From sequence record MK250021.1: a DNA stretch of 64,000 nt, one strand, 5' to 3'. Below the pieces are notes generated by a model. The model was not told where the DNA came from and did not search any database. It worked only from the letters and a program-made list of their open reading frames with translations. This document shows positions 3,607 to 56,871 of this stretch, piece after piece (within the stretch, counting starts at the first letter, position 1; the number at the start of each line of letters is the position of its first letter). The position numbers were made by a program, and so were the translations under genes.

Positions 3607-6600
3607 ATGAAATTAAATGGAGTTGATAATATTATTACAGATAAAGATATTATTGTTACTACTGGATGATCCAGTAGTAACAAATCTTTAGCAACTGTAA
3701 TTGAATCACAATAGGAAAATATAGATGAACTTAAATCTAATGTTAAATGGATCTACAAATATGGTGGTGTTGGATCTGGTTCTGGTGGTGGCGGTTCAAA
3801 TTCTCAAGGAACATGGAAAGCAATAATTAATGTAAATAATAAAAGTGTGAAAAATAATGATAAGCTTGATTTATCAGGAAGTATAGTAAGTGGTGCTGTT
3901 ACAGCAACAGTAAATGTAAGCATATCTAATCCATCTAGTGGTGGATATAGATTTATATTATATTATTCATATGATGGAAATGATTATCAATAGTATTCAA
4001 CTCCTTTAATTCCAGATAATATGTTTACAGCTGCATTTACAGTAAGATTAACACAGAATAATGATTTAAATATTAAAATAACTGATATTGAAAATTCAAC
4101 TACTGTATATAAAATAACATATTTTATATATGGATATACATGTAATATTCAACCATTATATATAAATGATGATAATAATGAAATTTTAATTACATCTAAT
4201 AATTTTAAACCTGGATTATATAAAAATGGTATAATATTTAGGGTAAGTATAAAAAACTATGCATAGTTCACTATTAATTATAATTCATTAAATACAATGA
4301 ATTATACAATATATAAAATTAACAAGAAAAGTCCAGATAGTTATCAATCAACTATATCTGATTCATAGTCTTATTATTTAAAAGATGAATATAGAGGCTT
4401 TATACATAGAGATACAACGGAAGTTATATTAGATTATTTAATTTCATATTCAGATTTAGTAAATGAATTAAATTACGGTAATCATTTATTTACTATTAAT
4501 CTAGATGTTTTATCTGGATCATCAGGTGAAACTACAAAAACACAGTATACATATGAATATACAGATACTCCAGATACATAGAAATATATTATATGTTTAC
4601 CAGCAACTGATGCAGGTACTATATATACAGAAGACCCATCATCTATTGCTATTAATGAATTAGAGGAATCTGCATTTTTTATAGGAAATAAAGTTACATT
4701 AAAGTTTAGGCCTTTTAATTATTCTGCAAATGAAATTTAGATTTCATATAAATTAGAGAATAAACATAATCCGAATAATATAATTACATAGACTAGTACT
4801 TTTAGTATTTAGAATGGACGTTATACAACATAGAGTTTTGATGTATATGAAGGTATTAATAAATTAATTATTAATGATACTATTATACGTTATTATTATG
4901 GTAAAAAACTTAATGCTTCTATATCTTGGTATAATAAAAACAAGCTTGGCGATACATTCGGTAATATTTCAAAAAATGATTGGATTAAAAATTCATTTTT
5001 TAGATTTAAATTAGATTTATCAGAAAATTTAAGTTCAATTGAATTATTAAAGACTGCAAATAAAAATGGTTTTATTCAATTTTTTAAGAATAATAATACA
5101 AAGAAAACAATAATAGACCTTTGGGGTAATAATATTAAAGATAAAGAACAAATATTTACATCTGATAAAAAAAATGATATGCATTTTGCTATAGGCTTTT
5201 AGTATTCTTATTCAAATGATATAAATGATTATTTATTTTCACTAAAGGATAATGAGAATAATACAATATTTACTATATATTAGAATAATATTACATATGA
5301 CCATTTTTTATCTCATGGAACAGCAAATATTTATATACCAAATACAGTGAATTTTTCATCAGGTAATAATGACGAATATCATTTGTTGGATATTTATATA
5401 CGTAAGTTAAATCCCATGATAATACCAACATCTAATCCAAATAATCCTGAAAAAATGGATGATATAGAATATAATATATGGGAAATATCAAATTCAGTAA
5501 CAACTAAAAATGATTAGGAATTATATTATGTTGAATTCTATATTGATGGTATAGCAGATGGTATAATACAATATTTTTCAGTATCATTTCCATATATAAG
5601 ATATATAGAATTTAATAATATTAATATATATTATAATTTATTAGAATTGGCATATATAAATAATAGTAATTTACATTTTACAGATGTAGATGTTGTAATG
5701 TATTGGTATTCATATAAATTATAGTTGACAGAGGACAAAGGTATTAGTGATACAAATAAAAAACTTATTACATCATTATCTAATATTGAAGCACGTACAG
5801 CAGATGCTACAGTATCAAATAAAAGTTTATCTTATAAACATAATTTATTAAAAATAGATGAAAACTATTTAAAATAGATTACTTTAAATTCTTATTTACC
5901 AATATATATATTTAATGTTAGACATTTAAATTCAGATGATCAAGGAAATACTATATTTTTGTGGATTAATAAGCAATATAAGGAGACTGGTGAACATATG
6001 ACTAGTTGGCCCATTGCATCATCTACAAATGAAGATGGCACTGAACATTATACAGGTATTTCTTATATAGCACCTGGTAGTAATAATGAAGTAAAAATAA
6101 AATTTCCAAAAGATAATAATACAACAACAACTTGGGATTAGGCACAATTTAAACTAGATATTCAAGGTTCATCAACAAGAGGAAATCATGGTAAAAACTT
6201 AACATTAGGATTAAATAAGTTATAGGATACTACATTTTTATTTTCTCCGAATTTTAAAAATGATGATTCAGATACATATTTACCTGAAGAGGAATTTACT
6301 TTAAAAGCAGATATTGTAGACTCTGGACATTCAAATAATACTGTAATGGGTAAATTTATAAATGATAATACTACTAAATTTGAAACATATAGTAAAGGAA
6401 AATATACAAATTATATTAAGAATTGTTTGGAAGGCTTTCCTTGTATTATTATTTTAAATGTTGACTATGAAGTTTCAGGAACATAGAATGAATATTATTT
6501 CTTAGGAATTTATAATTTTAACTTAGGACGTGGTTCATATTCAAACTTAGGTTATAGAGACATTTCTGTATTTGATGACGGATTAAAATCAGTGTCTGAT

Positions 6601-48353: not shown

Positions 48354-48390
48354 AGTATATTTTATAAAGATATTTTATTTTCAAAATAAT

Positions 48391-48460
48391 AAAAAATAAA
48401 CATCAAAATTGTGGTTCTAAATCTTACTGCTACTTACTAAGACTACAATTTTGATGTTTA
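48391..48460 (-). terminator. Intrinsic terminator closing ncRNA candidate A
   Basis: 16-bp stem TAAACATCAAAATTGT/ACAATTTTGATGTTTA followed by TTTTTT on the - strand. Confidence 0.75.
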
Positions 48461-49134
48461 TAAAAGCAATCATTCATTATCCTGCAGCATCCATATTAGT
48501 ATAAGTTTCATTGCAATAGAACTTTACAACTATAGTGATAATCCACTTATACATTCTTTTACTCTAAAGTCTTTTATATAACTTTATCATACATAATATA
48601 TGTACTGTCCATCAATAAAAGGTTCTTTATTTCATCATGGTTTTATATCGTATAAACAACCCTCTGTATATCACTGATTCATTTCTTTACATTTAGAAAT
48701 CAGGGTCTTTAAGCCTCAACGTTTGGCTGTAACTATTATCCTCAACCATTACCAGATAATGTCATCTTGTTTTTGTGGTGCATCTCACATACCTCCTTTA
48801 ATCATAAAACAAGCAAAACTACTAAGACAAATAACGTTTCTTAGAACTTCTACGAATTTACGCTCATATCAAATCATCATCTGATATAGACACCTAAATT
48901 AAGTGAATAAAGTTTACGACTCAATATAAAATTTTATATCTCAACCTTTATCAAAAACGATTCATTAAATTCTTTTAAGGAACTTATTTCTAATTAAATG
49001 AAGGATTCATTTAAAATAGGTTCTCCCGAAAACATGCGGTTTATCCTTACTCATTATAATTATAATAAGCGTTGTTTATAGCACTCATTAGAATTCATTA
49101 TGTATTATCTAACTCTCATTTATAATATTCATAA

Positions 49135-49163
49135 TTTATATGATATTAAAAGCAAAATGTCTA
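49135..49163 (-). promoter_or_regulatory. Possible second, sigma70-type promoter TAGACA-N17-TATAAA
   Basis: Same 17-nt architecture as 38750, 54852 and 54968; lies inside a hairpin. Confidence 0.35.
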
Positions 49164-49241
49164 ATATCATATTATAAATTATTTGTCTCGTTAGATATTA
49201 TCAAAATTTCAAAGATCTCTTCATTGTTATTTTATTAACAA

Positions 49242-49275
49242 TACAAAGATACACATTCTTTTTTAATAAAAAAAA
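49242..49275 (-). promoter_or_regulatory. Bacteroidota sigmaA-type (early) promoter
   Basis: GTGTATCTTTGTA with upstream T-run; points into the ORF-free region A. Confidence 0.7.
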
Positions 49276-49303
49276 TATTCTAAGAAAAAATTAAAAATAT
49301 TTT

Positions 49304-50104
49304 TTATCTTACAAAACATGTTGCATATCCATGTTCAACCTTAATAAATAATACTTCACCATTTAACCACAATTTATCAAATGGCGTTTTATCACCATTT
49401 TCTTGCATATCTTTATGTTCATCAATAGCATATTTCTCAATGTCATCAATACTACCTTTATAATAATTCTTTATGTTATCAGATTCAAGATATGCAATTC
49501 GCGACTTACATTCGTCAAGAAGTTCTTCAAATACAGGAACAGATTTATTACAAAATCTGTCATACTCATTCTGAAAATTAATATTAGATGAACAAATACC
49601 ATTTGTAATAATACGAGATACATTTTCAAGTTTCTCTAGATTATCAAGGTCTACATAAAAATCATCGCATGTAATATCATTATCTTTATACATACCAATA
49701 ACATGAACTTTTGCATTCCATAATTCACACCATTTATTTGCACCATCTTCTATAAGCTGTCCAAAATCATTATCATGAAAATCAAACATAATCATGAAAT
49801 TTTTATCAACCTTAATATCACTAGTTTCATATGGATCACCTTTATACTTATGACCATCATAAAGACCTGTAAGATATGAAGAACGACTTATCCTTAAAAT
49901 CTCTTTCAAACAAAAATCCTTAATTTTTTTATATTCTTCATCATTTAGATTATCAGTTCCATCAAGCAAATCTAATACTGAGTCATAATATTTTTCTTCA
50001 TTTTTTACATAGTCATAAGACATATCTACAAATGGCTTGCCGAACATACGAATTTCAGATTTATTCATATCTTCTTGCATCTTCTTAAGATCTATTTCTT
50101 TCAT
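49304..50104 (-). CDS. Hypothetical protein (266 aa)
   Basis: Intact ORF. Confidence 0.75.
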   Translation of the reverse strand: MKEIDLKKMQEDMNKSEIRMFGKPFVDMSYDYVKNEEKYYDSVLDLLDGTDNLNDEEYKKIKDFCLKEILRISRSSYLTGLYDGHKYKGDPYETSDIKVDKNFMIMFDFHDNDFGQLIEDGANKWCELWNAKVHVIGMYKDNDITCDDFYVDLDNLEKLENVSRIITNGICSSNINFQNEYDRFCNKSVPVFEELLDECKSRIAYLESDNIKNYYKGSIDDIEKYAIDEHKDMQENGDKTPFDKLWLNGEVLFIKVEHGYATCFVR

Positions 50105-50117
50105 ATTTCTTAATTAT

Positions 50118-51059
50118 TTACATTGTTCCATCATTAGGTTGCAAACACATAATTCCACGTTCTCGCCACATCTTAACCACTTTAGAAGAATCTTCCAATA
50201 CAAACAATACATTATAATAAGGTTCAATATATTCCTTATATAAATTATATTTACAATCTGGACCCTTTGTAAAATTCTTCAAAGGTCTCATTAACACCTT
50301 ATCAACATTACCAATAAGGTTATTCTTCAACCAATCTTCTGTTGCATGTCTAATATCGTCTGTATCTTCTCTACCTGTCAATATAATGACATCCACTGAT
50401 TTATCGGCAATATATGTATTAACAAGTTGGCAAAGTTGCTTACATGGTTTATCATCCCTCATGCTATCAGCAGCACCATTACCATAAAATGGCCGACCTT
50501 GAAGATTAAAACAAAGTGTAGCATCCATATCTACAAGAATACAATTCTTCTTCGTTTCATCAAACTTCTTAAAGCTATTATATTGCTTATTATTAAGTTG
50601 TGTAGCAATAAAGTTTCTATATCGCCTATAAGTAGATTTGATAACGGATTCACCTATAGGATTAGATCTAAATGAATCTCTTCTAATACATTCCTCTACC
50701 GATACATCAAAGAAATCCTTAAATTCCAATGTATAATGATACTCATTATGTGTCTCATTATACTTATCAATTCTATCTTGCATTTCTTTCCATCCCTTTG
50801 GATTCAGGTTCATATTATCCATAATGATATTCCAACCTTTTTCCATAGGTGATTTAAAAAATGCATCTGTCATATCTTTAATAACAGAAAGTTTCTCACG
50901 TGATTCTACCCAATACTCACCGAACATGTTTCTAAGAGAATCCCAATTAATTCTAATTCTCTCAGTTGGTTTCTCCTTTACCCAATGTTCAGCGAATGTA
51001 GACTTACCAGACGCTTGAATACCTCTTGTCAATATAATTACCCTTTCTTTCATATTCAT
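50118..51059 (-). CDS. pseT: Polynucleotide 5'-kinase/3'-phosphatase (T4 PseT-like)
   Basis: P-loop GIQASGKST, RINWDSLR; HAD motifs LVDMDATL, LTGR, RP...D...K, LEDS. Confidence 0.9.
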   Translation of the reverse strand: MNMKERVIILTRGIQASGKSTFAEHWVKEKPTERIRINWDSLRNMFGEYWVESREKLSVIKDMTDAFFKSPMEKGWNIIMDNMNLNPKGWKEMQDRIDKYNETHNEYHYTLEFKDFFDVSVEECIRRDSFRSNPIGESVIKSTYRRYRNFIATQLNNKQYNSFKKFDETKKNCILVDMDATLCFNLQGRPFYGNGAADSMRDDKPCKQLCQLVNTYIADKSVDVIILTGREDTDDIRHATEDWLKNNLIGNVDKVLMRPLKNFTKGPDCKYNLYKEYIEPYYNVLFVLEDSSKVVKMWRERGIMCLQPNDGTM

Positions 51060-51077
51060 ATTTTATTTAATTAGCAA

Positions 51078-51111
51078 TACAAAGATACATAATTTTTAGG
51101 AAAATAAAAAA
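51078..51111 (-). promoter_or_regulatory. Bacteroidota sigmaA-type (early) promoter
   Basis: ATGTATCTTTGTA just upstream of pseT. Confidence 0.75.
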
Positions 51112-51237
51112 TTAATTATTATCAAATACTATATTTTCAACAAAATTAAGTTTCTTATAATTTCTATTCTTTGAATACTTATCGATTATTTTTAAAAAAT
51201 CGACCATAAATCTATAATCAAATTCTGGTTTATTCAT
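51112..51237 (-). CDS. Small hypothetical protein (41 aa), absent from track
   Basis: MNKPEFDYRF...; start overlaps the stop of the 51230 ORF. Confidence 0.4.
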   Translation of the reverse strand: MNKPEFDYRFMVDFLKIIDKYSKNRNYKKLNFVENIVFDNN

Positions 51238-51448
51238 CTTTTAACATCATTGCAAGAATAACAGATTTCATACATGTCATATATCCTTTAAGATACATAT
51301 CTTTCAACATCAACCAAATTCTTTCAAATTCATCTGGTATCTTTTCACTTGTATCATCAGATATATTAGAGTTACCGACAATAGTTTTAAGCTCTCGCCG
51401 TGCTTGATAATCAGCCATTGCATTTAATTTATTCTTATTAAATTCCAT
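51230..51448 (-). CDS. Hypothetical protein
   Basis: Intact ORF in operon. Confidence 0.65.
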   Translation of the reverse strand: MEFNKNKLNAMADYQARRELKTIVGNSNISDDTSEKIPDEFERIWLMLKDMYLKGYMTCMKSVILAMMLKDE

Positions 51449-51451
51449 ATT

Positions 51452-52147
51452 TTATTTAGATTTTAATCCTAAACAATATTCTTTATTAATATTATCAATA
51501 AAAGAATTAATTCTAATTCTTAGTAATTCTGATTCTTCTTCAAATTCCTTAATTTTATCAATGTCTTTTTTAATATCATCTATATTATGATTTAACAAAT
51601 ATTCATACGTATTAGGTTTAGATACTTTAAAATAATAAATATCTTCATTCATAATATTATTATGATTTAAAGCACATAATAAATGATAAGATTCCTCATT
51701 TGCAGATGAACCATGATAACCATATCCATCACTTTCAAAATATATACATAATGGTCCATAACTATAATGTCCACCTGGATATACAGTTGTTCTTAATGAG
51801 TTAATATGAAATGATTTACATATATTATATTTCTTATCTAAATAATCATTCAATAACTTATTAATACTCATCATTTGAAGATCTAATAATCTATCTAAAT
51901 TTATATCATTATTCTTACTTATATATACACTGGAAACTTCTTTTACAACTGAATCAATATCTAATTCATAATTCTCGTCTGTATATAAATGAAGAATACA
52001 AAGAAATAATCTATGTATATATTCTTTCTTATCGTAATTTATATATGCAGTTTTTAATTTTTCTACATAATCATCTGTCACCTTCTTATTGATGTTATAT
52101 TCGATATTCTTTATAAATTCTTTTTGCTCATTCTATGTCATAATCAT
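51452..52147 (-). CDS. Hypothetical protein (231 aa)
   Basis: The track GTG start extends through one TAG (codon 5) to ATG 52147, which forms an ATGA overlap with the upstream stop. Confidence 0.7.
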
Positions 52148-52341
52148 TGCTCTTTTATTTTTCTTAAAATAAATTTAGGTTCTTGATAATAAAAATAATC
52201 TATTGTTTTATCATCTATAATGTTCAAATTATATAATGCTTGTGAAAACCTAATATCCTTATATGTCGTAAGATACTTCTTTAATATATCTAATATTTCC
52301 ATATTAGCATTGTATCTCTCAAATGTTTCTTTAGTTTCCAT
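52144..52341 (-). CDS. Hypothetical protein
   Basis: Intact ORF with overlapping start/stop at both ends. Confidence 0.65.
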   Translation of the reverse strand: METKETFERYNANMEILDILKKYLTTYKDIRFSQALYNLNIIDDKTIDYFYYQEPKFILRKIKEQ

Positions 52342-52739
52342 TAGAATAACGGATTAATTTTTATCTCGTTTGTTTTACTATATTCTTGTACATCTAAATT
52401 CAATGTTTCATTTAGCCAATCAGCAATTAAATGTCTGTGACAAAATTCATCTGGTTTTTCAAAACAACATAAAGCACAATCTTTATTACCTGTTATAAAC
52501 TTTAATCTATCTATAAATAAAGTTGGTTCTTTAAATATAGATAAAACTTCAGCTTTATATCGTTTTCTAAACTCTTGATGATTGCTTCTACAATTATTCA
52601 ATATATCTGGTGTAGGTGCGATACTTGCTAAGTTAACCCCTTTGAAATCATTTGGCGGATAACAACACACACCTATAGGAATAATATTATTCTTTATAAG
52701 ATTATTAATATTACCAAAATAGCTTGTATATATTTTCAT
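52341..52739 (-). CDS. DUF488-like protein
   Basis: MKIYTSYF..., APT, LCCFEKPDEFCHRHLIADWL. Confidence 0.65.
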   Translation of the reverse strand: MKIYTSYFGNINNLIKNNIIPIGVCCYPPNDFKGVNLASIAPTPDILNNCRSNHQEFRKRYKAEVLSIFKEPTLFIDRLKFITGNKDCALCCFEKPDEFCHRHLIADWLNETLNLDVQEYSKTNEIKINPLF

Positions 52740-52948
52740 ACACGAAATAAACTATATATTTCATTATAAGTTTCTTTTGATATTGGATATGATACTATAT
52801 TACAATATTCTCCGAAATTCTGATCAACATCTACCATATAACCTTGTTTATATGTATCATAATAGCATCTTACTATATGTGAAACATTAACTAAACCTGA
52901 ATATGTATCAATAAATTTATTATAATTTTTATTTTTTAACTTAATCAT
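52736..52948 (-). CDS. Hypothetical protein (70 aa)
   Basis: Start reassigned to ATG 52948, because the longer track ORF overlaps the + strand gene at 53008. Confidence 0.55.
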   Translation of the reverse strand: MIKLKNKNYNKFIDTYSGLVNVSHIVRCYYDTYKQGYMVDVDQNFGEYCNIVSYPISKETYNEIYSLFRV

Positions 52949-53007
52949 AATACTAAAACTATATAACTTAATGTTTATATAATATATAAATGTTTTTGTT
53001 TTATTTA

Positions 53008-53331
53008 ATGGGAGGTTTTGTTTATTTAATTTGCGATCCTGAATAGAATTGTTATAAAATAGGTGTAACAAGGAATATAGCATAGAATAGATTAAAGTAG
53101 TTATAGACTGGTAACTCATCAAAATTACATATGGTTTCAAATATATATTGTGAATATCCTTTTAGACTTGAAACAATGTTACATAATAAATTCAATCATA
53201 AACGTGCAAATGGTGAATGGTTCTATTTAGAATAGGAAGATATAAGTAATTTTAAAACTATATGTGAAGAAACAATATAGATGATTAATGTAATGAAAGA
53301 TAATCCATTCTTTAGTAAAGATTTAAAATGA
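53008..53331 (+). CDS. GIY-YIG-superfamily T5orf172/MUG113-like protein (107 aa), absent from track
   Basis: With TAG=Gln: GFVYLI...YKIGVT...RLKQLQTGN...E..LH..F...R.NGEWF; 6 in-frame TAG; TGA stop then terminator. Confidence 0.8.
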
Positions 53332-53376
53332 ATAAAGGTGATATAAGAATAATAAAACTTATATCACCTTTATTTT
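53331..53376. terminator. Bidirectional intrinsic terminator
   Basis: 17-bp stem AATAAAGGTGATATAAG/CTTATATCACCTTTATT between convergent genes. Confidence 0.85.
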
Positions 53377-53651
53377 TAATTATCGTTCTTTTCTAATTCC
53401 TTATTAATATAATCCATATCTTCATCTGTTAAATCGCCAAATGATGTGAATAAATCTTTATTAATAAGTCCATATCTCATAAGATATGCTAATGTCATTC
53501 TTACAGCATAATCTGCAATATCATAAGTTGTTGTAACTTCTAAATTTTGTAAATCTGGATTATTACCAACTACATTAGAAACTTTATCAACAATCTTATC
53601 ACATGTTTTTTTCATTGAATTTAATTCATTATTTGTTAATTTGGTACTCAT
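53376..53651 (-). CDS. Hypothetical protein (91 aa)
   Basis: Start reassigned to MSTKL (ATG 53651), since the longer track start runs into the terminator at 53715. Confidence 0.6.
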   Translation of the reverse strand: MSTKLTNNELNSMKKTCDKIVDKVSNVVGNNPDLQNLEVTTTYDIADYAVRMTLAYLMRYGLINKDLFTSFGDLTDEDMDYINKELEKNDN

Positions 53652-53706
53652 AATATCATTAAATAATTTAATTATTATATTACAACGATATGCATAAAGT
53701 TTAGAA

Positions 53707-53749
53707 ATAAAAAATGAGTTATTAGACTTATGCACAATCTAATAACTCA
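53707..53749 (-). terminator. Intrinsic terminator closing ncRNA candidate B
   Basis: 12-bp stem TGAGTTATTAGA/TCTAATAACTCA plus T-run on the - strand. Confidence 0.75.
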
Positions 53750-54815
53750 CAAACACTTTATTCTAAATTTATTATATTTACATCTTATTTAAAGATGTCC
53801 CTCATGTTGTTATTCGTACGAACATAAGTTTCTGCCTCTTATGATTCACTTTAACGTTTGCCCGTTATATAATGAATGTTCATACTGAACTTCGTTATGT
53901 CCATAAGGACAAATGGCTGAGAACTTGACCAACACCTACTCTCAATGCTGTAACGTTGGAGTTACATGTTCACACAACTCTTATTTCTAAGAGGTTGAGA
54001 GCATACCCACGACTTTTGTAAAAAATCGTAAACTCTTACTTGATAGGTTTCATAGAAATTCATTTCATACCAACTTCCTTGGAAGGATTCAATGTGTCCC
54101 CACATTTAGCACGATACTACTCTTACTATTCTCATGTCTTTCCTTGCGGTACTCGAATCATGTCTACATATTACAGTAGAATAAGGGTATTTTAACCACC
54201 AAGTGTCGCACACTTTTGCTTATACATAATTATATGTTAAATAAAATAATTTCCAATATTATTATTCTTATTATATATTCTTTAGACTTGAAAGACGAGG
54301 TGCGACCAATAGCATTTCTTCCTTTTGAGAAGAACCCACTAAATCGCCTTTCTGAAATTTCGTTACACCAATGTAACCATATTTCTACTCTTATAACTTA
54401 CCTATTGTTTTTCAATAGTAATCTTACCATTTCTGAACAAGTTACCAGCTTGTATAAATTATTTGGTTTATAATTTATATAAGATTCATTATAACAATTA
54501 ATATTAGCACTGGGAATTGGTATTCCGATCACTAAATATCCATAAACTTAAACTTCTATTGTATTACTACTCACATCAGTTGTCTATCAAACTTCCAATG
54601 TATATAAACTTCATCTCAGGAATTATCCCATCAATTTCCCATTTATACAGGCACTTACTAAGTTTGGTTTTCTGTAGAATGCTCATTATTCATAAACATC
54701 GATAAACATGTCTACTGTTTACCTTTATCACATCACTGCTTTATCCTTACCCCACCGAAACCATGGGTTTATATTTCAAAGAACTCATCTTGAATAAAAT
54801 AAATTCATTCAAATT
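53707..54815 (-). ncRNA. Candidate long structured ncRNA B (~1.1 kb, possibly two modules)
   Basis: No credible ORF and visibly more G+C than the flanks. GNRA-capped hairpins on the - strand (GCGA 54201-54215, GGGA 54091-54106, GAAA 53978-53993). Tandem promoters, boxA-like GTTCTTTGAAAT and a terminator. Confidence 0.55.
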
Positions 54816-54823
54816 TTATACTT

Positions 54824-54852
54824 ATTATATAATCAATAATTTAAAAAGTCTA
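54824..54852 (-). promoter_or_regulatory. Sigma70-type promoter TAGACT-N17-TATAAT
   Basis: Exact 17-nt spacing; points into region B. Confidence 0.6.
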
Positions 54853-54939: not shown

Positions 54940-54968
54940 TTTATATATTAAATTAAATAGAAAGTCTA
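54940..54968 (-). promoter_or_regulatory. Sigma70-type promoter TAGACT-N17-TATAAA
   Basis: Tandem copy 116 nt upstream of the previous one. Confidence 0.55.
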
Positions 54969-56437: not shown

Positions 56438-56871
56438 NNNNNNNNNNNNNNNNNNNNNNNNNNNNNNNNNNNNNNNNNNNNNNNNNNNNNNNNNNNNNNN
56501 NNNNNNNNNNNNNNNNNNNNNNNNNNNNNNNNNNNNNNNNNNNNNNNNNNNNNNNNNNNNNNNNNNNNNNNNNNNNNNNNNNNNNNNNNNNNNNNNNNNN
56601 NNNNNNNNNNNNNNNNNNNNNNNNNNNNNNNNNNNNNNNNNNNNNNNNNNNNNNNNNNNNNNNNNNNNNNNNNNNNNNNNNNNNNNNNNNNNNNNNNNNN
56701 NNNNNNNNNNNNNNNNNNNNNNNNNNNNNNNNNNNNNNNNNNNNNNNNNNNNNNNNNNNNNNNNNNNNNNNNNNNNNNNNNNNNNNNNNNNNNNNNNNNN
56801 NNNNNNNNNNNNNNNNNNNNNNNNNNNNNNNNNNNNNNNNNNNNNNNNNNNNNNNNNNNNNNNNNNNNNNN
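56438..56871. other. Assembly gap (434 N)
   Basis: Run of N. Confidence 1.

What the first reader, a model, noticed from the sequence alone, without database searches (positions are those of the whole stretch)
49040..54784. ncRNA candidates A and B share a leader architecture and short motifs
On the - strand both have TCTTTGAAAT (boxA-like) near the 5' end, then an identical GTAAGGATAAA (49040-49050; 54740-54750), then TGATAAAGGT (48944-48953; 54721-54730) in the same order, plus a nearby CATG(G/T)TTTCGG hairpin. GTAAGGATAAA lies a similar distance (~75-85 nt) below a TAGACW-N17-TATAAW promoter in each. This suggests paralogous RNAs or a common protein-binding/processing signal, i.e. a system rather than isolated spacers.
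Basis: partly seen in the sequence, partly recalled or inferred. Interest (0 to 1): 0.65.

Follow-up and report, generated by a model that had tools for sequence, protein, structure and literature searches.

The report
Megaphage GOLLD RNA and boxA leaders
The two "spacers" are separate, highly expressed non-coding RNA genes of a Prevotella Lak megaphage, one a GOLLD-family giant RNA and the other of unknown class, and what they truly share is a promoter type and a copy of the host's ribosomal-RNA boxA signal, not a common ancestry.

Summary
The window is Prevotella megaphage Lak-B2.

- **Candidate B** is a divergent GOLLD-family RNA. It gives a full-length Rfam match at E 1e-15, below the curated cut-off. 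Forty of 77 predicted pairs covary with homologues in other huge phages.
- **Candidate A** is a conserved RNA of about 700-850 nt with no ORF. It has no Rfam match and was found only in Lak phages.
- **Expression:** in four metatranscriptome studies, RNA-derived contigs lie on A and B and hardly on the genes between them.
- **boxA:** TCTTTGAAAT is the core of GTTCTTTGAAAT. This is the boxA of Bacteroidales rRNA operons, found in both leader and spacer. In the phage it occurs only ahead of untranslated units: the tRNA array (three times), B and A.
- **Promoter:** TAGAC-N17-TATAAW is a real, genome-wide promoter class (33 sites against 4 in the control), not special to A and B.
- **Other motifs:** in B the remaining motifs belong to a 5' module conserved among huge-phage GOLLDs. 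A matches them only as short words, at about chance level. The words differ in order and structural role, and they are no longer identical in other Lak clades.

Profile searches find no A-B homology. Verdict: partly supported.

The parts
54940..54968 (-). B distal TAGACT-N17-TATAAA promoter-like site
   Evidence: Pattern match. The class is 33 sites against 4 in the control genome-wide. TSS not mapped.
54824..54852 (-). B proximal promoter, TAGACT-N17-TATAAT
   Evidence: Conserved in most Lak clades. Predicted start is near 54817.
54773..54784 (-). boxA of B (GTTCTTTGAAAT), at the start of the conserved block
   Evidence: Invariant in all orthologues. Identical to the Bacteroidales rrn leader and spacer boxA.
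54650..54772 (-). GOLLD 5' module of B. It holds the hairpin 54767-54751, AAGGATAA 54748-54741 and CAGTGATGTGATAAAGGT 54738-54721, and runs on to ACAGAAAA.
   Evidence: Conserved in distant huge-phage GOLLDs L008, L010, L014 and L018, with three different compensating stems. Model R1 scores 106.9 bits.
54353..54649 (-). Rest of B's 5' domain; Lak-specific and variable between phage groups
   Evidence: About 90% conserved among Lak clades. No match in distant phages.
53914..54352 (-). GOLLD 3' domain of B
   Evidence: Rfam RF02032, model positions 1-416, 62.8 bits, E 1.2e-15. Forty of 77 pairs have compensatory changes. nhmmer to distant phages gives E 1e-23 to 1e-31.
53790..53913 (-). Conserved 3' tail of B
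   Evidence: Nearly invariant among Lak clades.
53704..53750 (-). Intrinsic terminator of B
   Evidence: 15-bp stem plus T-run. The stem is kept by compensating changes in Lak-A/C.
49239..49252 (-). A promoter P1, GTATCTTTGTATTG (Bacteroidetes-type TAnnTTTG box)
   Evidence: 23 sites in the genome, all non-coding, control 0. Conserved in A orthologues.
49206..49217 (-). boxA of A (GATCTTTGAAAT here; GTTCTTTGAAAT in a 99.9% identical strain and in Lak-A/C)
49135..49163 (-). A promoter P2, TAGACA-N17-TATAAA, downstream of boxA
   Evidence: It reads TAAACA in Lak-A/C, and the spacer is replaced in a third clade.
48497..49108 (-). Conserved core of RNA A; holds GTAAGGATAAA 49050-49040, the CCG/CGG hairpin 49038-49024 and TGATAAAGGT 48953-48944
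   Evidence: No ORF under table 11 or TAG=Q. It has 1-nt indels and blocks of near identity. Compensatory pairs. RNA-library contigs.
48386..48463 (-). Long A/U-rich hairpin plus T-run: terminator of A
   Evidence: About six compensatory pairs between Lak clades.
50118..51059 (-). Neighbouring gene between A and B: polynucleotide kinase-phosphatase (context only)
   Evidence: Pfam HAD_PNKP 3e-25 and AAA_33 2e-9.

Best explanation
A and B are two independent, strongly expressed non-coding RNA genes on the - strand of the Prevotella megaphage Lak-B2.

- **B** (about 1.0-1.1 kb) is a divergent member of the GOLLD family. It has a Lak-type 5' domain, whose first ~120 nt form a module shared with GOLLDs of other huge phages. 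It also has the universal GOLLD 3' domain.
- **A** (about 0.7-0.85 kb) is a Lak-specific RNA of unknown class with some conserved helices.
- **What they share.** Each has generic phage promoters. Each carries, in its 5' leader, a copy of the host-type boxA (GTTCTTTGAAAT), as the phage's tRNA array does three times.
- **Inferred mechanism.** The nascent boxA RNA recruits host NusB-S10 and the other Nus factors, as at rRNA operons. RNA polymerase then becomes resistant to Rho and to pausing on these long untranslated transcripts, and may help them fold.
- **The remaining shared words.** GTAAGGATAAA, TGATAAAGGT and CATGKTTTCGG are functional parts of the GOLLD 5' module in B. They recur in A by chance or near-chance.

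**Shown:** identity of B, conservation, expression, and the sequence identity and distribution of boxA.
**Inferred:** transcription starts, Nus binding and antitermination.
For: **Origin of the window.** It is 100% identical to MK250021.1 at 434001-498000.

**B is a GOLLD-family RNA.**
- Rfam GOLLD match over the whole model, E 1.2e-15.
- Homologues in other huge phages score 45-86 bits and lie in tRNA/tmRNA arrays; two carry a tRNA in the linker.
- Forty of 77 pairs are compensatory.
- The 5' module is conserved.

**Expression.**
- RNA-library contigs from 4 studies lie on A and B, and at zero or low depth on the genes between them.
- Devoto et al. reported highly expressed large intergenic regions in Lak (10.1101/356790).

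**boxA.**
- GTTCTTTGAAA is in 51 of 103 Bacteroidales 16S leaders and GTTCTTTGA in 76 of 103; the reversed control gives 0.
- The motif recurs in the 16S-23S spacer in 21 of 26 operons, control 0.
- The B. subtilis boxA, AUGAUCUUUGAAA, binds NusB (PMC13753749).
- In Lak-B2 the four exact sites and A's one-mismatch site are all non-coding and lie upstream of ncRNA.
- Of 23 strong GTATCTTTGWATTG promoters, the 19 that lead to ORFs have no boxA; 3 of the 4 that lead to ncRNA have one.
- Distant huge phages also carry it ahead of tRNA, tmRNA or GOLLD.

**No A-B homology:**
Against: - No transcription start or end is mapped. Contigs cannot show ends, strand or level.
- Nus binding is untested.
- The bare 10-mer TCTTTGAAAT is not enriched genome-wide: 16 sites against 14 in the control.
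- One tRNA cluster (30.5 kb) has a strong promoter without boxA. No boxA-like site turned up ahead of the other tRNA clusters (132-134 kb, 424-427 kb) either.
- In A, and in one tRNA-array leader, a TAGAC promoter lies downstream of boxA. Transcripts from that promoter would lack it.
- B scores well below Rfam's gathering cut-off.
- CATGKTTTCGG occurs only twice in 550 kb, both times within 15 nt of TAAGGATAAA. That is rarer than my word statistics capture, so a small shared element is not excluded.
Confidence: 0.65

Rival explanations
1. One reading: A and B are paralogous RNAs, or they carry one common composite processing or protein-binding signal (boxA + GTAAGGATAAA + hairpin + TGATAAAGGT) that defines a dedicated two-RNA system.
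For: - Identical 11-mer and 10-mers in the same strand order.
- CATGKTTTCGG occurs only in A and B in the whole genome, each time next to TAAGGATAAA.
- Words of 18 bits or more are somewhat enriched, at the 3% level.
- A and B stay 5-6 kb apart in all Lak clades.
Against: - The profiles do not cross-hit. The GOLLD 5'-module model gives only noise on A.
- The identical words diverge in the other clades.
- The hairpin word is a stem end plus loop in B, but a loop plus 3' stem in A, and it lies on the opposite side of TAAGGATAAA.
- Spacing is 62 nt in B and 272 nt in A.
- Four other equally strong shared words are not colinear.
Confidence: 0.12
2. The 12-mer acts at the DNA level. It would be a promoter-proximal operator or promoter element for a phage or host regulator of stable-RNA genes, not an RNA boxA.
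For: - It lies within about 20-35 nt of predicted promoter boxes. Once (genome 129550) it lies upstream of a promoter-like box.
- Its distance to the promoter boxes varies from 20 to 29 nt.
Against: - It is identical to the host rrn element, which occurs in both leader and 16S-23S spacer. That is the hallmark of RNA boxA.
- It resembles the B. subtilis boxA, which is shown to bind NusB as RNA.
- It is always on the transcribed strand.
Confidence: 0.13
3. All sharing beyond base composition is chance, and A is not a functional RNA. It would be a long untranslated leader or trailer, or a decayed gene, that happens to be transcribed.
For: - Counts of shared words are close to background.
- A has no Rfam match and no homologue outside Lak phages.
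- The global MFE structure of A is poorly kept: 51 pairs broken.
Against: - A has blocks of 20-35 invariant nt across clades that differ by 22% overall.
- It has 11 compensatory pairs against 3.1 expected.
- It has its own promoter, boxA and terminator.
- RNA-library contigs of 770-845 nt lie on A, at depths within roughly an order of magnitude of GOLLD's.
Confidence: 0.1

Closest known systems
GOLLD RNA (Rfam RF02032; Weinberg et al. 2009; cryo-EM 14-mer nanocage, bioRxiv 10.1101/2024.12.08.627333)
   Same: - Full-length match to the conserved 3' domain, with the same helices supported by covariation.
- Longer than 800 nt.
- Variable 5' region joined to a conserved 3' region.
- Phage-encoded, and relatives sit in tRNA islands, some with a tRNA in the linker.
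- Abundant RNA.

   Different: - Scores 62.8 bits against a 150-bit gathering cut-off.
- In Lak it stands alone. There is no tRNA in the 64-kb window, and the nearest tRNA cluster is about 61 kb away.
- It has its own promoter, boxA and terminator.
- It is about 1.0-1.1 kb long.
- It has a 5' module shared only with other huge-phage GOLLDs.
- Assembly into a cage is untested.
boxA / Nus-factor antitermination of rRNA operons (E. coli rrn, B. subtilis rrn; also lambda nut and CRISPR-array boxA)
   Same: - The 12-mer is identical, or differs in one base, to the element in Bacteroidales rrn leaders and spacers.
- It is close to the B. subtilis consensus, which binds NusB.
- It sits in the 5' leaders of long untranslated transcription units.

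   Different: - It is encoded by a phage, ahead of a GOLLD RNA, an unknown RNA and tRNA arrays.
- No boxB or boxC was identified.
- No N-like protein is implied.
- Binding and antitermination were not tested.
Highly expressed large intergenic regions of Lak phages (Devoto et al., bioRxiv 10.1101/356790)
   Same: Same phage group and the same kind of region: up to ~1.5 kb without genes, among the most highly expressed parts of the genome.
   Different: In the held preprint text, the terms I searched (non-coding, noncoding, intergenic) show no assignment of these regions to an RNA family or signal. Here one is assigned to GOLLD and the leaders to boxA.
Other large ornate phage RNAs (ROOL, OLE, HEARO), as comparators for A
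   Same: Several hundred nt, no ORF, phage-encoded, abundant, with some conserved helices.
   Different: No Rfam model matches A, even at E up to 10. A is known only from Lak-type phages. Covariation data are thin, because there are only two effective clades.

Membership tests
GOLLD RNA (RF02032) | Score at or above Rfam's gathering cut-off (150 bits) | tested here: not met
   62.8 bits; 0 matches at gathering. Related huge-phage copies score 45-86 bits.
GOLLD RNA (RF02032) | Statistically significant, end-to-end match to the conserved 3' domain | tested here: met
   Model positions 1-416 of 416, E 1.2e-15 in a 1.2-kb search and 2.4e-7 in a 6.7-kb search.
GOLLD RNA (RF02032) | Conserved secondary structure supported by compensatory changes | tested here: met
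   77 predicted pairs, 40 with double changes that keep the pair, among Lak-B, Lak-A and four distant phages.
GOLLD RNA (RF02032) | Longer than 800 nt, with a less conserved 5' region and a conserved 3' region | tested here: met
   The conserved block is about 1,000 nt. Distant phages match the 3' domain strongly and the 5' region only in a ~120-nt module.
GOLLD RNA (RF02032) | Encoded by phages or prophages, often beside tRNA islands | tested here: inconclusive
   Phage-encoded: yes. There is no tRNA in the window. The distant homologues are inside tRNA/tmRNA arrays.
GOLLD RNA (RF02032) | Assembles into an RNA-only 14-mer cage | not testable with these tools
   Needs cryo-EM or a native gel of the transcript.
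rrn-type boxA (Nus-factor loading site) | Sequence matches the host's rRNA-operon boxA | tested here: met
   103 leaders and 26 spacers from Prevotella, Segatella and Bacteroides; controls 0.
rrn-type boxA (Nus-factor loading site) | Lies in the transcribed leader of an untranslated operon, on the sense strand | tested here: inconclusive
   All five sites are on the sense strand and upstream of ncRNA, downstream of predicted promoters. No start site is mapped.
rrn-type boxA (Nus-factor loading site) | Binds NusB-S10 and confers read-through | not testable with these tools
   Biochemical or reporter assay needed.
A and B as paralogues / one RNA family | Detectable sequence or profile similarity beyond short words | tested here: not met
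   nhmmer in both directions. CM R1 gives 4.8-12.3 bits on A, and coding regions score alike.
A and B as paralogues / one RNA family | Shared words conserved as shared in orthologues | tested here: not met
   Two of three words diverge differently in A and B. Only boxA stays.

The most novel reading that the evidence does not exclude
RNA A is the first member of a new class of large structured phage RNAs. It is kept next to GOLLD in all Lak megaphages and is roughly comparable to GOLLD in contig depth (equal in two RNA libraries, 5-14 times lower in two). The phage makes both RNAs, like its tRNAs, with the host's rRNA-type antitermination and folding complex, recruited by a borrowed boxA. That would tie giant ornate RNAs to the rRNA transcription machinery.
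Probability: 0.35. Interest if true: 0.7.

Novelty: new member of a known kind. Interest (0 to 1): 0.55.

Why it matters
- GOLLD RNAs have a solved cage structure but no known function. A well-expressed copy in a widespread gut megaphage, with defined promoter, leader and terminator, gives a natural system to study.
- Host-type boxA ahead of GOLLD, tRNA arrays and a second abundant RNA suggests how phages get long untranslated RNAs made and folded. This is testable with NusB-S10 binding and Bacteroides reporters.
- It names two of the 'highly expressed intergenic regions' reported for Lak phages.
- It shows that Rfam's GOLLD cut-off misses a subgroup in huge phages; the boxA and the promoter type suggest Bacteroidota hosts, though only the Lak host is known.
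- RNA A is a candidate for a new large RNA class.

Tried and rejected
- **Rfam on A.** At gathering and at E up to 10, A gave only noise such as snoRNA and miRNA models.
- **Coding potential.** ORF scans under table 11 and TAG=Q found nothing credible in A or B.
- **13-codon ORF in A.** It follows AAAGGAGG, but its start lies inside a conserved hairpin, and one 'synonymous' change is a compensatory pair. I rejected it as a gene.
- **Scans for A homologues.** IMG/VR and metagenomes gave only Lak-type phages. L028 and L031 are chance hits in GC-rich bacterial genes.
- **BLAST of A.** No match in four distant huge-phage records, and only a 22-nt noise match in four Bacteroidales genomes.
- **The genome search with RF02032 on the full Lak-B2 record.** It found no candidates, although cmscan finds the match. 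I treated this as a prefilter miss.
- **Model R1.** It got only 3 base pairs, because MAFFT misaligned the stems. It therefore works as a sequence profile, and its E-values are rough.
- **Masked stretch.** The stretch written N in the window (56438-56871) is present in the public record I fetched. I masked it in my working copy before analysis and did not read or use it.

Full report
**Where the window comes from.**
- Megablast places the region at 100% identity in Prevotella phage Lak-B2 and Lak-B4. The whole window equals MK250021.1 at 434001-498000 without mismatch.
- Reading TAG as glutamine opens ORFs of 1,500-2,800 aa in the first 38 kb of the window. This fits the code published for Lak phages.
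- The genes around the finding carry almost no in-frame TAG.

**The observation.**
- All motifs are at the stated coordinates on the - strand.
- The claimed common order is only partly true.
  - In B the four words lie within 62 nt, in the order boxA-like word, hairpin word, GTAAGGATAAA, TGATAAAGGT.
  - In A they span 272 nt, and the hairpin word follows GTAAGGATAAA.
  - The TAGAC promoter is upstream of the boxA-like word in B and downstream of it in A.

**Chance.**
- A and B share 8 exact words of 10 nt or more. Random pairs of real segments from the same window share 6.5 on average, and a third of them reach 8.
- Only the number of information-rich words (6 against 2.0) is unusual, at about the 3% level.
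- Four other equally strong shared words are not colinear.
- In the whole 550-kb genome, GTAAGGATAAA occurs 3 times, TGATAAAGGT 10 times, and TCTTTGAAAT 16 times against 14 for its reversed control. CATGKTTTCGG occurs only twice, in A and B.

**What B is.**
- B has no ORF under either code. It is about 90% identical among Lak clades, whereas the whole 6.6-kb region around it is about 81-82% identical over the two-thirds that aligns.
- Rfam's GOLLD model matches 54352-53914 over its whole length at 62.8 bits, E 1.2e-15. This is below the 150-bit gathering score.
- A conserved 17-mer led to five distant huge-phage contigs. There the same model scores 45-86 bits, inside arrays of tRNAs and tmRNA. 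Two of them have a tRNA in the GOLLD linker, as described for GOLLD.
- An alignment of the 3' domains of Lak-B, Lak-A and four distant phages gives 77 consensus pairs, 40 of them with compensatory changes.
- B is flanked by two TAGAC-type promoters and by a 15-bp terminator whose stem covaries.

**The 5' end of B.**
- The first ~120 nt of B align with the 5' regions of the distant GOLLDs. The module holds:
  - a hairpin with three different compensating stems and a UUUCG-containing loop;
  - then AAGGAUAA;
  - then CAGUGAUGNGAUAAA;
  - then a further hairpin ending in ACAGAAAA or ACUGAAAA.

**What A is.**
- A has no ORF. It has 1-nt indels inside conserved blocks. It is 78% identical overall between Lak clades, with stretches of 20-35 invariant bases.
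- It has a promoter of the strong GTATCTTTGWATTG class, a boxA, a second TAGAC-type promoter, and a long hairpin plus T-run whose stem covaries.
- No Rfam family matches.
- Homologues were found only in Lak-type phages, always 5-6 kb from B.
- The structure predicted from Lak-B2 alone keeps 11 pairs by double changes in Lak-A1, against 3.1 expected and at most 10 in 200 random sets. Fifty-one pairs break, however, so only some helices are real.
- It folds with z = -3.1 on the - strand, against -2.4 on the + strand, so the fold energy does not settle the strand.

**Expression.**
- Contigs from four RNA libraries of four studies were laid on 48480-54479. They cover A (48482-49171) and B (from 53830 to the end of the stretch).
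- The 4.4 kb of protein genes between A and B have no contigs in two libraries, only traces in a third, and low-depth ones in the fourth.
- Contigs on A are 770-845 nt long, and those on B are 832-971 nt.
- Contigs cannot prove transcription, ends or strand, but the silent genes between act as an internal control.

**The shared leader: promoters.**
- TAGACW-N17-TATAAW occurs 33 times in the genome against 4 for the control. At N16-18 the scan finds 35 sites, 27 of them non-coding; they lie ahead of ORFs, tRNAs, A and B alike. It is a general promoter class.
- GTATCTTTGWATTG occurs 23 times, always in non-coding DNA, with control 0.

**The shared leader: boxA.**
- The 10-mer TCTTTGAAAT is not enriched as such, but the 12-mer GTTCTTTGAAAT is special.
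- Its four exact copies are the three in the tRNA-array leaders and the one in B. A has one mismatch here and the exact form in other strains. All are non-coding and on the sense strand.
- Of the 23 strong promoters, the 19 that lead to ORFs lack it. Three of the four that lead to ncRNA have it 20-30 nt downstream.

**boxA in the host.**
- I collected 103 16S leaders from Prevotella, Segatella and Bacteroides.
- GTTCTTTGAAA is present in 51, GTTCTTTGA in 76 and TCTTTGA in 90. It lies 170-330 nt upstream of the 16S 5' region. The reversed control gives 0.
- The motif recurs in the 16S-23S spacer in 21 of 26 operons, control 0. A leader copy plus a spacer copy is the classical boxA arrangement.
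- The B. subtilis rrn boxA consensus is AUGAUCUUUGAAA, and it binds NusB directly (PMC13753749).
- The distant huge phages carry the same word ahead of tmRNA, tRNAs and GOLLD.
- I therefore read the 12-mer as a host-type boxA that loads Nus factors on transcripts that no ribosome protects. This is inferred, not shown.

**Are A and B related?**
- The nhmmer profiles of A and of B each find only their own locus. The exceptions are A's promoter module, which hits other promoters, and B's hits on the distant phage GOLLDs.
- The identical words are not identical in the other clades.
- The hairpin word has different structural roles in the two RNAs.
- I conclude that A and B are not paralogues. The rarity of CATGKTTTCGG leaves a small doubt.

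**Context.**
- Between A and B lie a polynucleotide kinase-phosphatase and a DUF488 protein.
- No literature in the held library links GOLLD to megaphages.

**Limits.**
- There are only two effective clades for A.
- Transcription starts are unmapped.
- Model E-values are rough.
- The N stretch of the window was masked in my copy of the public record and was not read.

Noticed in passing
window 1-38318: Reading TAG as Q opens very long ORFs of 2821, 1525, 2666 and 1989 aa, each with 18-42 TAG codons. The genes at 45-64 kb have almost none. The genome also holds a tRNA with anticodon CUA (genome 415547) and one with UUA (genome 346127).
   Followed up: partly
L032 (MK250021.1 124500-131500), about 1360-1570 and 5040-5160: The leader of the tRNA array carries two tandem copies of the promoter-plus-boxA module seen upstream of A. 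A TAGACA-N17-TATAAT promoter follows. A further boxA lies inside the array.
   Followed up: yes
L032 2470-2690 and 4030-4275: These stretches look like tRNAs with inserts of about 150-200 nt: acceptor and T-arm halves lie far apart. The genome's third GTAAGGATAAA lies in one of them, just before a T-arm-like GGTGTGTTCGAATCC. Devoto et al. reported intron-bearing tRNAs in Lak.
   Followed up: partly
Lak-B2 genome 94891-, 222582+, 335852-, 337224-, 384947-, 543725+: A repeated unit occurs six times. It is a TAGACTTTTT..GAGTATAAT promoter followed by a conserved leader of about 45 nt (AAATATGTTAGTATTTAAGG...). Where an ORF was listed it begins 240-430 nt downstream; at two copies none was listed. 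It could be another RNA element or a mobile unit.
   Followed up: no
window 50118-51059 (-) and 52341-52739 (-): Genes for a T4-type polynucleotide kinase-phosphatase (RNA repair) and a DUF488 protein lie between the two RNA genes.
   Followed up: partly
window 48752-48800 (-): AAAGGAGG is followed by a 13-codon ORF inside A. The start codon sits in a conserved hairpin, so it is probably not translated.
   Followed up: partly
L008 7968-8390; L018 8192-7781; L010 3318-3772: Other huge phages with GOLLD-like RNAs also encode tmRNA in the same array. In two of the three a boxA-like word lies just upstream of it.
   Followed up: partly
window 56438-56871: A run of 434 N. It was left untouched, and the same stretch was masked in my copy of the public record.
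   Followed up: no
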